Origin: Perkinsela sp. CCAP 1560/9
Lineage: Eukaryota > Protista > Euglenozoa: Kinetoplastea
Length of the DNA stretch: 64,000 nucleotides
Assembly: GCA_965644495.1 (NCBI GenBank)
Contig: CBFFSA010000015.1
Location: 248,001-312,000, forward strand
Direction: 5' to 3'
This document shows positions 38,156 to 40,375 of the stretch, piece after piece; position 1 is the first letter of the stretch, and each line of letters opens with the position of its first letter. A program made the position numbers and the translations under genes. Below the pieces are notes generated by a model. It made no database searches and was not told the DNA's origin. It saw nothing but the letters and a program-made list of their open reading frames with translations.

Positions 38156-39509
38156 CTGTGCCCCCCCCACTTATAGTGCCGCGGTTTTCGACCAAACGGC
38201 ACTATAAGTTGGGGGTGCACTGTGTTTCAGTTCGATTTTATTAAAGTCCATTTATTTTTCACAGAGTACATTTTTTTCAAAATTGGTACATTTGTTGGTG
38301 ATTCGTGACGAAGAAGCACTGCCCCCTATGCTTACCTTCCTCCCGCGCATGCCCCGAGATGCGCACGGCACTCGTCATCGATTAAGAGCGACTTAACTCC
38401 TATAAGACACTCGCAAAACTTCATAAGCTTAACCCCTGGTCCATCATTGAAACTTTTTGCTTTTTTCCTGAAGATTAACCGGAAACGTTTAAGAATACCT
38501 TCCGGGACTACAGTAAAGTAAACACTTTTGGTCAAGGAGGCTAAAGGGCATATGACTGAATACTACAGATTACTTTGCACTCCTTTTCCACGTTTTCTGA
38601 TCTACTTTACTACTGTTCTTCATCCGAAACATTCGAAAAAATACATCCAAAAAAGTTGTAATTAGCTTTTTTAACCCCTACCTGGCTAGGGGGGGTAGAG
38701 GGTCGCTCGAGTGAAAAGGAACTCGGATTCGGAACGATTGGGTCGAAAAACAGTGGTATACCAAATATTTCCAAAATCGGACAAATTACAAGACCTGTAG
38801 GGGGGGGGGTAAAAGACGGTGAACACCACTGTAGCTTTCTACGCCGTTGTTTCCACAAGATACCCCTTCTTGAAACCGTGACGGTGAAAGTGAAGCATTA
38901 TTTCACATAAAAAATATTTTGTTTCGTTAATTTTTTTATGTGTTCTAAGTGTTGCCTTATCATATTTTACGGGCACTGAAAGTATTTTTCTGACATTTGT
39001 TTACATACAGCTGTACTTTTTTCGCGGTGACGGTACGTTTGATAGTGGGAAAGAAGCGCGACATAATCGGCTGAAGTTCGGCGCAGAAATTGTGAAAAGT
39101 AAGCTAAAGAGAGGAAAACATGAAGATTATGCCCTCCGTCGCCTGTTTTAGCACCTCAAATGACATTGCGAGAACGTAGAAATCGTTCTAGAACAAGGGC
39201 AAGAGAGTTAATTTTTTCTTTTTTACTAAAATAGGGCGATAATAAATGTTTTAAAAAAAGTATGAAATAATGCTTCACTTTGACCGCCGTGACACGTCTC
39301 CAAAATGACGCCCCCCAAAATAGGTGTCCTGGCAAAACCAGGCAAAACGTGGCAAAACCTGGAAAAACCCGGCAAAACTTAACAGGTTTCAACCCTCTTA
39401 CTCTACCTTTTTGGTCAAAAGAAATAGGTCAATTTTTCTGACATTTGTTTTTCAAAACGGCACTTTAAGTGGGGGGGTACCCCGCGGCACTATAAGTGGG
39501 GGGGCACAG
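38156..39509. mobile_element. 1354 bp pogo/Tc1-type TIR element with TA duplication, inserted in a family A copy
   Basis: TA-ctgtgccccccccacttatagtgccgcgg and ccgcggcactataagtgggggggcacag-TA; empty site at ~10150; internal LLIDDECRAH weakly resembles the pogo DDE LL.LD...H motif. Confidence 0.9.
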
Positions 39510-39620
39510 TATATTACTGTGTTCCTCCTTATATTTTCACTGTTTTTGTTCACTTTTTCAATAATGGAGGGTAGAGTGGTAGTTATACAACCACCGCAAT
39601 AAGGGAACACTAATTAAGGG

Positions 39621-40035
39621 AAGTGTAGTTGGCAGACGGTGGGCCTTATAACCTGCAGGATGGGAGTTCGATTCCTGCTATCGACAAAACTCGCAACCTG
39701 GCGGCCTCACTACAAAGGGAAAGCGATCAGGAGTGCCTTCAAGGCCCACACCGAACCCCGCTCCCCTGGAGTAACGACCCGGAACCGCAGAGCTGAACCA
39801 GGCTCCAGCGCAGCCGCTAAATTGCAAGCTGCTTACACAAAGGAGGCTTGAGATACAGCCTACACGATGCAACGGGGTTAGACGCCCGTCCTGGTAGCTA
39901 CGGTTGGGTAGCCGTGCTCGGGCCGCAAGGCGTCCAGTGCCGTCTGGGAAGGGGGTAGCAAGACGATGAAGGTCGGTGACCTGAGACTCTACCCTAACGG
40001 TTGGCGCTGCATAGCCCTCCGTGTCTTCTTTTTTT
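39621..40035 (+). ncRNA. tRNA-headed structured RNA element ending in T7 (SINE-like / Pol III candidate)
   Basis: A-box-like gtgtagttggc, B box gagttcgattcc, GC-rich hairpin body, T run at 40029-40035. Confidence 0.55.
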
Positions 40036-40067
40036 GAAAATCATTTTCCCTTAATCAGTGTAAATCT

Positions 40068-40263
40068 TAGCCCAGGCTAAAATGGAACGGGGAGATACTA
40101 AAGGCAGCTTTGAAAAACCACCACAAACTGGAACGGTATCTCCCGTTAAATATTCTTTTGTTACATTAGAATGCTCTACAAACCGGGAGATACCGTTCCA
40201 GTTTTGTGGTGGTTTTCCAAAGGTGCCTTTAGTATCTCCCCGTTCCATTTTAGCCTGGGTCTA
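40068..40263. repeat. GGGAGATAC foldback palindrome 3
   Basis: ~78 bp inverted arms around a ~40 bp loop. Confidence 0.9.
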
Positions 40264-40375
40264 AAAGTGCTTCTGTTGAAAAAGGGGCGGAGTCGGAGGA
40301 GGAATATTTTTCTTATGTTTTTCGGAGCACAAATGCCGTGATAGCCTTCTATACTAGGTCCCAAAATATTGAAAT

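What the first reader, a model, noticed from the sequence alone, without database searches (positions are those of the whole stretch)
39621..40035. tRNA-headed, poly(T)-terminated RNA with a group I ribozyme-like core
Seen: a tRNA-like head (A/B boxes, ends atcgaca, 5' acceptor strand missing), a ~350 nt GC-rich body and a T7 run. By eye the body has elements in group I order: P4-like ctggcgg (39698) with ccgcag (39785); P6 gctg/cagc; J6/7 GCA; P7 5' gccgcta; P3-like ttgc pairing with gcaa (39693); P8 aagctgctt/aaggaggctt; J8/7 GAGATA; P7 3' cagcct. Known: the canonical core reads GCA-GAGACUA ... AAGAUA-YAGUCC. Here one P7 pair co-varies (A-U to G-C), but the G-binding G is C, so this copy may be inactive. 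Also seen: aaccccg/cggggtt pairing, 3' hairpins and a K-turn-like gatga-aggtc-ggt-gacct-ga. Inference: a Pol III-driven, SINE-like mobile RNA carrying a group I-like ribozyme outside rDNA, which I do not know to be described in kinetoplastids.
Basis: partly seen in the sequence, partly recalled or inferred. Interest (0 to 1): 0.8.

Follow-up and report, generated by a model that had tools for sequence, protein, structure and literature searches.

The report
Truncated tRNA-like-headed SINE copy, no ribozyme
This stretch is one worn, 5'-shortened copy of a short non-coding jumping element (a SINE with a tRNA-like head) present at roughly 50 sites in a kinetoplastid genome. The proposed group I ribozyme core is not supported, but a SINE of this type seems not to have been described in kinetoplastids.

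Summary
Window 39623-40028 is a 5'-truncated, 4.3%-diverged copy of a 409-nt dispersed repeat with a (TCT)n tail. The genome holds about 84 tail matches, roughly 50 of them independent sites. Full copies start with a 73-nt tRNA-like head (perfect B box, near-perfect A box). At least 11 copies have 7-14-bp target-site duplications, several are 5'-truncated, and copies differ 0.3-4.3% from consensus. That makes it a SINE.

The T7 run is not a terminator. Paralogous empty sites read GGGAA-TAAT-TTTTTTTT-GAAAA, so the T run is target DNA.

The group I reading fails. Rfam finds no Intron_gpI at E<=10 on this copy or on consensus-like copies. Folding is no more stable than shuffles (z -0.73). None of 28 proposed pairs is compensatory across 25 copies. 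Several "core" letters (GAGATA, CCGCAG, TTGCAA) are private mutations of this copy. An HDV-like descriptor also finds nothing.

Extra finding: the SINE is distantly homologous (z 6.6) to a second ~375-nt family with a tRNA-like head. Its 50-nt 3' module also occurs fused behind that family's T-run end, so the module is portable. No partner LINE was found, and there are no expression data.

Other first readers of this scan flagged what look like further copies elsewhere in this genome. I did not check those.

The parts
39623..39686 (+). tRNA-like head of the SINE, 5'-truncated. It starts at head position 10 of 73 and ends ...atcgaca.
   Evidence: Alignment with 24 other copies. The empty-site joint places the left boundary after 39622. 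The head is in register with tRNA numbering (A14, G18G19, T33, T54T55C56, A58, C61). Mean identity to 28 tRNAs of the same genome is 45.2/73, against 46.5 for tRNA-vs-tRNA and 40.5+-1.25 for shuffles. Rfam tRNA scores only 17.2 bits on a consensus-like copy. ARAGORN calls none.
39623..39632 (+). A-box remnant (head positions 10-19; positions 8-9 were lost with the truncation, C11 is T here).
   Evidence: The consensus GGGCGTAGTTGG deviates from the textbook box A TRGCNNAGTGG at position 8 (G for T); this is read from the sequence. The box consensus is from general knowledge.
39665..39675 (+). B box (agttcgattcc here; GGTTCGATTCC in the family consensus, which matches GGTTCGANNCC at 11 of 11 positions).
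   Evidence: alignment; these columns are invariant or nearly so.
39687..39982 (+). SINE body: GC-rich, non-coding, origin unknown. It is distantly homologous to the body of a second ~375-nt family ('C') with a tRNA-like head.
   Evidence: No Rfam family at E<=1 on 6 full copies or at E<=10 on one copy. Global alignment with family C without the tail gives z 6.6. A 1-nt indel in 8 of 25 copies breaks the only long open frame.
39983..40023 (+). 3' module GAGACTC...CCGTG. Predicted nested stem (ACGG/CCGT around GGC/GCC). Shared with 'family B'.
   Evidence: 88% identical to the tail of a non-SINE repeat. Covariance model R1 scores 75.7 bits here and gives 84 matches above 20.6 bits genome-wide, all of them SINE copies or family B. 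Predicted stems.
40024..40028 (+). Remnant of the (TCT)n tail (tcttc).
   Evidence: Other copies carry (TCT)2 to (TCT)33 at this place.
40029..40035 (+). T7 run: target-site DNA, not part of the element and not its terminator.
   Evidence: Empty-site contigs in X1, X2 and X3. 15 paralogous empty sites read ...GGGAATAATTTTTTTTGAAAA.
39601..39622 (+). Left flank of the insertion site. Together with 40029-40066 it forms a small palindromic spacer that belongs to a repeated composite element.

Best explanation
The stretch is a dead, 5'-truncated copy of a SINE, a short non-coding retroposon, in a kinetoplastid genome.

Inferred mechanism:
- Master copies are transcribed from the internal A and B boxes of the 73-nt tRNA-like head, presumably by RNA polymerase III.
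- The transcript runs through the 336-nt body and the (UCU)n tail. The sense strand has no run of three or more T.
- The reverse transcriptase of an as yet unidentified LINE recognises the 3' end (the ~41-nt stem-loop module plus the UCU repeats).
- That enzyme copies the RNA into a nicked target by target-primed reverse transcription. This leaves 7-14-bp target-site duplications and, often, 5'-truncated copies.

The window copy landed in a T-rich spot of another repeat, lost its first 9 nt and 4 nt of target, and has since collected 17 substitutions.

Shown here: family structure, boundaries, target-site duplications, truncations, tail, portability of the 3' module, and the empty site.

Inferred only: Pol III transcription, LINE dependence, and recognition of the module.
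For: Copy number and spread:
- 111 first-look candidates, with the 40 scored at 92-100% identity on many contigs.
- 84 tail matches above 20.6 bits genome-wide.
- About 45 single sites plus four clusters in which a copy was amplified together with identical flanks.

Boundaries: similarity starts at GCGGTG and stops at CCGTG + (TCT)n, and the flanks are unrelated.

Target-site duplications of 7-14 bp in at least 11 independent copies, for example ATTGCATTATCGC, TTCCGGTTCTGAG, CTTAACAAAT, CGTTTCATGA, AAACCCGC.

5'-truncated copies starting at positions 79, 154, 204, 206 and 228.

Head:
- B box matches at 11 of 11 positions, and the A box deviates from TRGCNNAGTGG at position 8.
- It is in tRNA register and as similar to this genome's tRNAs as tRNAs are to each other.
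- Sub-threshold tRNA and mascRNA hits fall exactly on it.

No T run of 3 or more on the sense strand, but AAAA (TTTT on the antisense strand) once.

Copies are 0.3-4.3% from consensus, so the family was recently active.

The 3' module also sits behind a complete family-C unit including its T8-9 end ('family B'). That is the behaviour expected of a transferable reverse-transcriptase recognition element.

Empty paralogous sites exist for the window copy.

The genome is rich in reverse transcriptase genes: more than 1000 candidates, 150 scored, all above the Pfam cut-off.
Against: No LINE with this 3' module or a (TCT)n tail was found. What I tried: exact and degenerate patterns, covariance model R1, 12 reverse transcriptase loci, and two LINE 3' ends. 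The genome could only be sampled, and R1 scored only 150 of 1959 candidates.

The head is not a foldable tRNA. The acceptor and anticodon stems do not pair, ARAGORN and Rfam do not call it, and no parent tRNA was identified among 28 tRNA genes.

There is no evidence of expression. The only run guessed to be RNA holds nothing.

The window copy itself has no target-site duplication.
Confidence: 0.88

Rival explanations
1. One reading: the body of this mobile RNA is a group I intron-like ribozyme core (P3-P8, J6/7, J8/7), possibly inactive in this copy.
For: Short complementary segments in the stated order exist in the window copy. Most are also pairable in other copies, because the copies are 95% identical.
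Against: No match to Intron_gpI or any other ribozyme family at E<=10 on the window copy or on a consensus-like copy, or at E<=1 on six full copies.

MFE z is -0.73 on the sense strand and -0.61 on the antisense strand.

None of 28 proposed pairs, and none of 123 RNAalifold pairs, shows a compensatory change.

The P4 T-A pair is present in only 3 of 25 copies. The J8/7 GAGATA, the P4 CCGCAG and the P3 TTGCAA are private substitutions of this copy.

The element is bounded by target-site duplications, not by exons.
Confidence: 0.01
2. It is a retroposon, but its tRNA-like head is only a relic. The RNA that gets copied comes from read-through Pol II polycistronic transcription or another promoter, as with the spliced-leader-headed retroposons noted elsewhere in this genome.
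For: Kinetoplastid genomes are transcribed pervasively (general knowledge; PMC6597758 title and abstract). Other retroposon families of this genome are reported to begin with spliced-leader sequence (earlier notes; not checked here). The head does not fold as a tRNA. Some copies have 9-14 extra nucleotides between the target-site duplication and head position 1 (L048, L079, L059).
Against: Full-length copies from unrelated loci begin at the same nucleotide, head position 1. That fits an internal promoter that travels with the element.

The B-box columns are almost invariant.

The sense strand is free of T runs while the antisense strand is not.

No spliced-leader sequence precedes any copy.
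Confidence: 0.08
3. It is a family of functional Pol III non-coding RNA genes (a structured cellular RNA) multiplied by DNA duplication, not a mobile element.
For: Four clusters were clearly multiplied as parts of tandem units: C5:866-903 kb, C1:392-410 kb, C15:21-48 kb, and C46 with a 3.96-kb period. The body is GC-rich and foldable.
Against: About 45 single copies lie in unrelated flanks with their own target-site duplications. There are 5'-truncated copies and variable-length (TCT)n tails. Substitutions hit predicted stems freely, with no compensation. Copies carry indels of 1, 3, 6 and 9 nt. No Rfam family matches.
Confidence: 0.03

Closest known systems
tRNA-derived (type 2) SINEs with a LINE-type 3' module and a simple-repeat tail, such as eel UnaSINE1/UnaL2, tortoise Pol III/SINE-CR1, and salmonid HpaI/SmaI (from general knowledge)
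   Same: A 5' head with internal A and B boxes in tRNA register, a non-coding body of a few hundred nt, a short stem-loop 3' module followed by a short tandem repeat instead of poly(A), variable-length target-site duplications, and 5'-truncated copies.
   Different: No partner LINE with the same 3' end was found. The head has lost the cloverleaf and has no identifiable parent tRNA. The tail repeat is (TCT)n. The host is a kinetoplastid.
Core-sharing SINE superfamilies (CORE-SINE/MIR, V-SINE, Deu-SINE; from general knowledge)
   Same: Two families with different tRNA-like heads (class-I-like here; a long-variable-arm-like head with a perfect A box in family C) share conserved internal blocks. 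They carry different 3' ends.
   Different: The shared similarity is weak (z 6.6), is seen within one genome only, and extends into the 3' half of the head. No sequence relation to the known animal cores was tested, because no repeat library was at hand.
Kinetoplastid non-autonomous retroposons RIME, NARTc and SIDER (PMC12278014)
   Same: Short non-coding elements, presumably dependent on a LINE, in the same group of organisms, and they create target-site duplications.
   Different: Those are deletion derivatives of ingi/L1Tc, with the 77-79-nt LINE 5' signature and poly(A) tails. The element here has a tRNA-like Pol III-type head and a (TCT)n tail. The papers read list only ingi, CRE, VIPER and TATE (plus Merlin in bodonids) for kinetoplastids (PMC12278014, PMC8101967).
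Group I introns (Rfam RF00028)
   Same: Only the size range of the body and a handful of 3-6-bp pairings that can be laid out in P3-P8 order.
   Different: No model score, no conserved core, no covariation, no G-binding site, no exon context, and the element is bounded by target-site duplications.

Membership tests
tRNA-derived SINE | 5' region related to tRNA with internal box A and box B at tRNA spacing | tested here: met
   The consensus head is 73 nt and in register with tRNA numbering. The B box GGTTCGATTCC matches at 11 of 11 positions. The A box GGGCGTAGTTGG deviates from TRGCNNAGTGG at position 8. Identity to this genome's tRNAs equals tRNA-vs-tRNA identity and lies 3.8 sd above shuffles. 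The cloverleaf itself is not kept.
tRNA-derived SINE | Short, non-coding, many dispersed copies | tested here: met
   409 nt plus tail. 84 tail matches at roughly 50 independent sites. The only long open frame is broken by an indel in 8 of 25 copies.
tRNA-derived SINE | Signs of target-primed reverse transcription: target-site duplications, 5' truncations, 3' repeat tail of variable length | tested here: met
   Target-site duplications of 7-14 bp in at least 11 copies. Truncations at positions 79, 154, 204, 206 and 228. (TCT)n tails of 0-111 nt.
tRNA-derived SINE | 3' end shared with a partner LINE of the same genome | tested here: not met
   Patterns, covariance model R1, 12 reverse transcriptase loci and two LINE 3' ends found no LINE with this end. 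The search covered only part of the genome, so a partner is not excluded. The module does recur on another non-autonomous element (family B). A shared LINE tail is usual for this kind of SINE but not required for every SINE.
tRNA-derived SINE | Transcription by RNA polymerase III | not testable with these tools
   No RNA run holds the stretch. Indirect support only: no T run of 3 or more on the sense strand.
Group I intron / group I-like ribozyme | Match to the family covariance model (conserved P3-P9 core) | tested here: not met
   No Intron_gpI match at E<=10 or at E<=1 on six copies. Nothing at gathering score in the whole window.
Group I intron / group I-like ribozyme | Core helices conserved or co-varying among homologues | tested here: not met
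   None of 28 pairs is compensatory. The P4 T-A pair is present in 3 of 25 copies. Three motif letters are private to the window copy. Power is low because copies differ by only about 2%.
Group I intron / group I-like ribozyme | G-binding site in P7 | tested here: not met
The proposed P7 is 3 bp (GCT/AGC).
HDV-like self-cleaving ribozyme | Nested double-pseudoknot layout P1-P2-P3-P1'-P4-P2' with a C in J4/2 | tested here: not met
   My own permissive descriptor gives 0 hits on the SINE sense strand, while 52% of shuffles give at least one. No Rfam HDV-type hit. The descriptor was written from memory, so this test is rough.
Box C/D (K-turn) RNA | Conserved C box RUGAUGA and D box CUGA flanking a terminal stem | tested here: not met
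   snoU82P scores 15.9 bits against a gathering score of 42. About half of the copies read AATGA instead of GATGA.

The most novel reading that the evidence does not exclude
This family and family C are the first SINEs with tRNA-like heads and Pol III-type promoters described in Kinetoplastea, and they form a small core-sharing superfamily. They have different tRNA-like heads on a common internal core and exchangeable 3' ends. Family B would then be a SINE caught at birth: a complete, U-run-terminated family-C transcript joined to the reverse-transcriptase recognition module of the (TCT)n family.
Probability: 0.35. Interest if true: 0.5.

Novelty: new member of a known kind. Interest (0 to 1): 0.3.

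Why it matters
As a ribozyme claim it does not stand, so nothing here changes what is known about group I introns.

As a transposon it is an ordinary kind of element in an unexpected host. The kinetoplastid mobile elements listed in the papers I could read are ingi, CRE/SLACS, VIPER and TATE and their deletion derivatives, plus Merlin in bodonids. None of these has a tRNA-like Pol III head.

A young SINE family with a portable 3' module offers three things:
- markers for strain and population history in this protist;
- a handle for finding the active LINE;
- an example, in family B, of how a new SINE can be assembled from a terminated Pol III transcript and a borrowed tail.

It also matters for annotation. 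About 50 loci that look like structured Pol III RNA genes are copies of one retroposon.

Tried and rejected
Group I ribozyme: rejected on Rfam results, folding energy and pair counts.

My own descriptor found nothing on the sense strand, and Rfam found nothing on the SINE or on family C.

Box C/D or K-turn RNA: sub-threshold score, and the C-box G is not conserved.

7SL, snRNA or rRNA origin of the body: no Rfam match.

Coding potential: the 113-aa open frame is broken by an indel in a third of the copies.

Parent tRNA: the best of 28 tRNA genes is Ile-TAT at 51/73, which is not distinctive. Val, Leu, Ser and other tRNA genes were not among the 27 listed by the genome search.

Partner LINE: see the Against line.

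Relatives outside this genome: two metagenome scans gave nothing or chance matches.

Expression: four of the five runs listed were laid; all are contigs, and the single run guessed to be RNA holds nothing.

Target-site duplication of the window copy: none. The site shows a 4-nt target deletion instead.

Paraflagellar rod protein search to confirm the taxon: blank. KMP-11 is present.

Full report
**What is at the coordinates**

There is a tRNA-like segment ending atcgaca (39680-39686), a GC-rich stretch of about 340 nt, and tcttc followed by seven T. ARAGORN finds no tRNA in the window. Rfam at gathering thresholds finds nothing in the 64 kb.

**It is one copy of a repeat family**

A search of the window's own genome (21 Mb, 110 contigs) with 39621-40035 returned 111 first-look candidates. 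The 40 that were scored are 92-100% identical over nearly the whole query and lie on many contigs.

I aligned 30 copies with 120 nt of flank and then 25 distinct copies (A1). These show sharp boundaries. The consensus starts GCGGTGCGGGCGTAGTTGG, which is 9 nt upstream of where the window copy starts to match. It ends CCCTCCGTG, followed by (TCT)n of very variable length. The sequences outside these boundaries are unrelated between loci.

The consensus element is 409 nt and 62% G+C. Copies differ from it by 0.3-4.3%. The window copy, with 17 substitutions, is the most diverged of the 25.

**It is a retroposon**

At least 11 independent copies are flanked by direct repeats of 7-14 bp that abut the element on both sides. 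Examples are ATTGCATTATCGC, TTCCGGTTCTGAG, CTTAACAAAT, CGTTTCATGA, TCCACTTTAGC, CTACCGAATG and AAACCCGC. Other copies are 5'-truncated, starting at positions 79, 154, 204, 206 and 228, while keeping the 3' end and tail.

A covariance model of the last 50 nt (R1) gives 84 matches above 20.6 bits in the genome. About 45 are single sites. The rest lie in four clusters where a copy was multiplied together with identical flanks:
- C5:866-903 kb
- C1:392-410 kb
- C15:21-48 kb
- a 3.96-kb tandem unit on C46, in which the SINE is interrupted by another element

**The head**

The first 73 nt are in register with tRNA numbering: A14, G18G19, T33, T54T55C56, A58 and C61. The B box is a perfect GGTTCGATTCC. 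The A box deviates from the textbook box at position 8 (the box consensus is from general knowledge).

The mean identity of the head to 28 tRNA genes of this genome is 45.2/73. That equals tRNA-vs-tRNA identity (46.5) and lies 3.8 sd above shuffled heads (40.5 +- 1.25).

The acceptor and anticodon stems do not pair. ARAGORN calls no copy, and Rfam tRNA reaches only 17.2 bits (gathering score 29) on a consensus-like copy. The head alone best resembles the tRNA-like mascRNA model, at 19.5 bits. No parent tRNA stands out; the best is Ile-TAT at 51/73.

The head is therefore tRNA-like and carries Pol III-type boxes, but it is no longer a tRNA. The sense strand of the consensus has no run of three or more T, whereas the antisense strand would have TTTT. 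This is compatible with Pol III transcription through the whole element but does not prove it.

**The window copy and the T7 run**

Contigs from three public runs of the same organism join 39622 directly to 40029 with TAAT in between. That joined sequence, TTAAGGGAATAATTTTTTTTGAAAA, occurs 3 times exactly and 12 times with 1-3 mismatches in the assembled genome.

The flanks therefore belong to a repeated spacer, and the paralogues show the site before insertion. The T run was already there. The SINE, from head position 10 to CCGTG plus tcttc, replaced TAAT. This explains both the missing 5' acceptor strand (a 5' truncation) and the poly(T) terminator (target DNA). The copy has no target-site duplication.

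**The ribozyme claim**

Rfam with permissive filters gives no Intron_gpI and no other ribozyme family in any of three scans:
- at E<=10 on 39400-40300
- at E<=1 on six complete copies
- at E<=10 on a single consensus-like copy

The minimum free energy of a full copy is -166.7 kcal/mol against -162.5 +- 5.8 for dinucleotide shuffles (z -0.73). The antisense strand gives z -0.61.

None of the 28 pairs has a compensatory change. The P4 T-A pair exists in only 3 of 25 copies, because the consensus reads CCGCCGAG. RNAalifold finds 0 compensatory pairs among 123.

Several motif letters are private substitutions of the window copy. These are GAGATA (consensus GAGACA), CCGCAG, and the two G-to-A changes in TTGCGAGC...ACGCAA, which in fact destroy a 5-bp hairpin present in the consensus.

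With copies only about 2% from consensus, the covariation test has little power. Even so, every positive expectation of the ribozyme hypothesis failed.

A permissive HDV-like descriptor of my own found nothing on the sense strand, while half of the shuffles gave a hit. The K-turn-like GATGA...CTGA is AATGA in about half of the copies.

**The 3' module and a related family**

The last ~48 nt, GAGACTCTACCCTA.CGG...CCGTG(TCT)n, recur at 88% identity on a different repeat in the C1:392-410 kb cluster.

That repeat ('family B') is a complete unit of a second abundant family ('C', ~375 nt) followed by the module. Family C begins GGAGGTGGCGGAGTGGCAAGAA, a perfect A box, in a head with what looks like a long variable arm. 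It ends GGAATGATTTGGATTTTT. It has its own ~11-bp target-site duplications in L028, L010 and L050. In family B, the C unit runs right through its T8-9 end and is then followed by the module and (TCT)n.

The SINE itself aligns with C+tail over its whole length, with z 11.7, or z 6.6 with the shared tail removed. The best blocks are:
- the B box through CCCGCT.ATCG
- CGGCGGCCTCACT
- GGAGGA.CG.CCCGGA
- GTCTG.GAAGGG

So the genome holds at least two related retroposon families with tRNA-like heads, and the 3' module is portable between them. This is the behaviour expected of a reverse-transcriptase recognition element. I regard this relation as likely but not proven, because the significance rests on mononucleotide shuffles.

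**The partner LINE**

The genome is full of reverse transcriptase genes: more than 1000 candidates, 150 scored, all above the Pfam cut-off. I found no LINE that ends with the module or with (TCT)n. What I tried:
- exact and degenerate patterns
- the R1 model
- 12 reverse transcriptase loci
- two LINE 3' ends, one from a family with six identical RT copies

The partner therefore remains open. The variable 7-14-bp target-site duplications and the lack of a fixed target suggest an endonuclease of the AP type rather than a site-specific one. That is inference from general knowledge of LINEs.

**Host and literature**

The window shows the following:
- same-strand intron-less ORFs
- a tandem array of at least six HSP70 genes
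- NAT10, ESF1 and Maf homologues
- a Merlin/IS1595 transposase remnant

KMP-11, a kinetoplastid protein family, is present in the genome at 150 bits. A search for paraflagellar rod protein was blank, which may reflect an incomplete genome set.

The papers I could read list ingi, CRE, VIPER and TATE and their non-autonomous derivatives RIME, NARTc and SIDER for kinetoplastids, plus Merlin in Bodo and Perkinsela (PMC12278014, PMC8101967). A search for 'tRNA-derived SINE' together with 'kinetoplastid' found no paper. Absence from this library is not proof that the element is unpublished.

**Other data**

Two metagenome scans gave nothing or only chance matches to the pattern. The four runs I laid on the stretch are all contigs, and the one run guessed to be RNA holds none of it. 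There is therefore no expression evidence either way.

**Earlier notes of this scan**

One note (s1-683319) covers the same stretch. Several first-reader notes on other pieces of this genome describe tRNA-headed ~380-nt SINE-like or Pol III RNAs, and 'two different tRNA-like heads fused to one conserved core'. These probably concern the same families. I did not see their sequences. My own comparison of the SINE with family C supports the last of them.

**Verdict**

This is an ordinary kind of element, a SINE with a tRNA-like head and a simple-repeat tail, seen here as a decayed and truncated copy. The ribozyme reading is pattern-matching on a GC-rich sequence. The modest interest lies in the host group, the related second family, and the portable 3' module.

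Noticed in passing
L080:400-775 (+), L028:2519-2889 (-), L010:661-1030 (-), L050:2494-2863 (+), L025:2424-2786 (+): Family C: an abundant ~375-nt repeat. It starts GGAGGTGGCGGAGTGGCAAGAA (a perfect A box, in a tRNA-like head with a hairpin where a long variable arm would be) and ends GGAATGATTTGGATTTTT. It has ~11-bp target-site duplications and often occurs as inverted pairs. It is distantly homologous to the SINE studied here.
   Followed up: partly
L073:3053-3510 (-) and L073:4775-5238 (-) (G000 C1:392-410 kb): Family B: a full family-C unit including its T8-9 end, followed by the SINE's 3' module and (TCT)n. A long and a short variant exist; the short one lacks the inner 10-nt hairpin. It is found only inside one ~5-kb tandem cluster and looks like a chimeric retroposon formed by joining a terminated Pol III-type transcript to the module.
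   Followed up: partly
window:48709-63954 (-): Tandem array of at least six near-identical 669-aa HSP70 genes with a period of about 2366 bp. Each carries a 272-aa antisense ORF that is probably an artefact of GC-rich coding sequence.
   Followed up: partly
window:40895-41587 (-): A 230-aa ORF with a weak DDE_Tnp_IS1595 (Merlin-type transposase) match, 28.5 bits. It lies 0.9 kb from the SINE copy, and MITE-like repeats surround it.
   Followed up: partly
window:40067-40262: Near-perfect ~95-bp-arm palindrome (gcccaggctaaaatggaacggggagatac...), a member of a repeat family. One SINE copy (L014) is inserted in another member. Rfam microRNA-precursor models give sub-threshold hits on such hairpins in L003 and L025, which are almost certainly artefacts of long hairpins.
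   Followed up: no
window:39330-39380 and 39455-39507: Short tandem motifs just upstream of the SINE's host repeat: five ~10-nt units (tggcaaaacc-like), and a direct repeat cactttaagtggggggg / cactataagtggggggg.
   Followed up: no
L010:379-450 (+) (G000 C2:~953.5 kb): A genuine tRNA-Gly(TCC) gene lies about 1.05 kb upstream of a SINE copy, with family-C copies in between. Whether these retroposons prefer the neighbourhood of tRNA genes was not examined.
   Followed up: no
G000 C5:866-903 kb (L011-L021, L026, L030, L034-L045): At least 14 SINE copies share identical flanks and the same target-site duplication (CAGCT(T/C)CGA). This is one insertion amplified as part of a tandem unit spaced 1-2.4 kb apart. 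One member (L036) is a 5'-truncated copy preceded by a 28-nt A run.
   Followed up: partly
L080 (G000 C46:29-53 kb): Seven tandem units of 3.96 kb. Each contains a SINE copy split after position 146 by a ~400-bp family-C insertion in the opposite orientation.
   Followed up: partly
L048, L079, L059 (5' junctions): Some full-length SINE copies have 9-14 extra nucleotides (for example AAAAAAAAT) between the upstream target-site duplication and head position 1. These could be 5' transduction from the source locus or untemplated additions.
   Followed up: no
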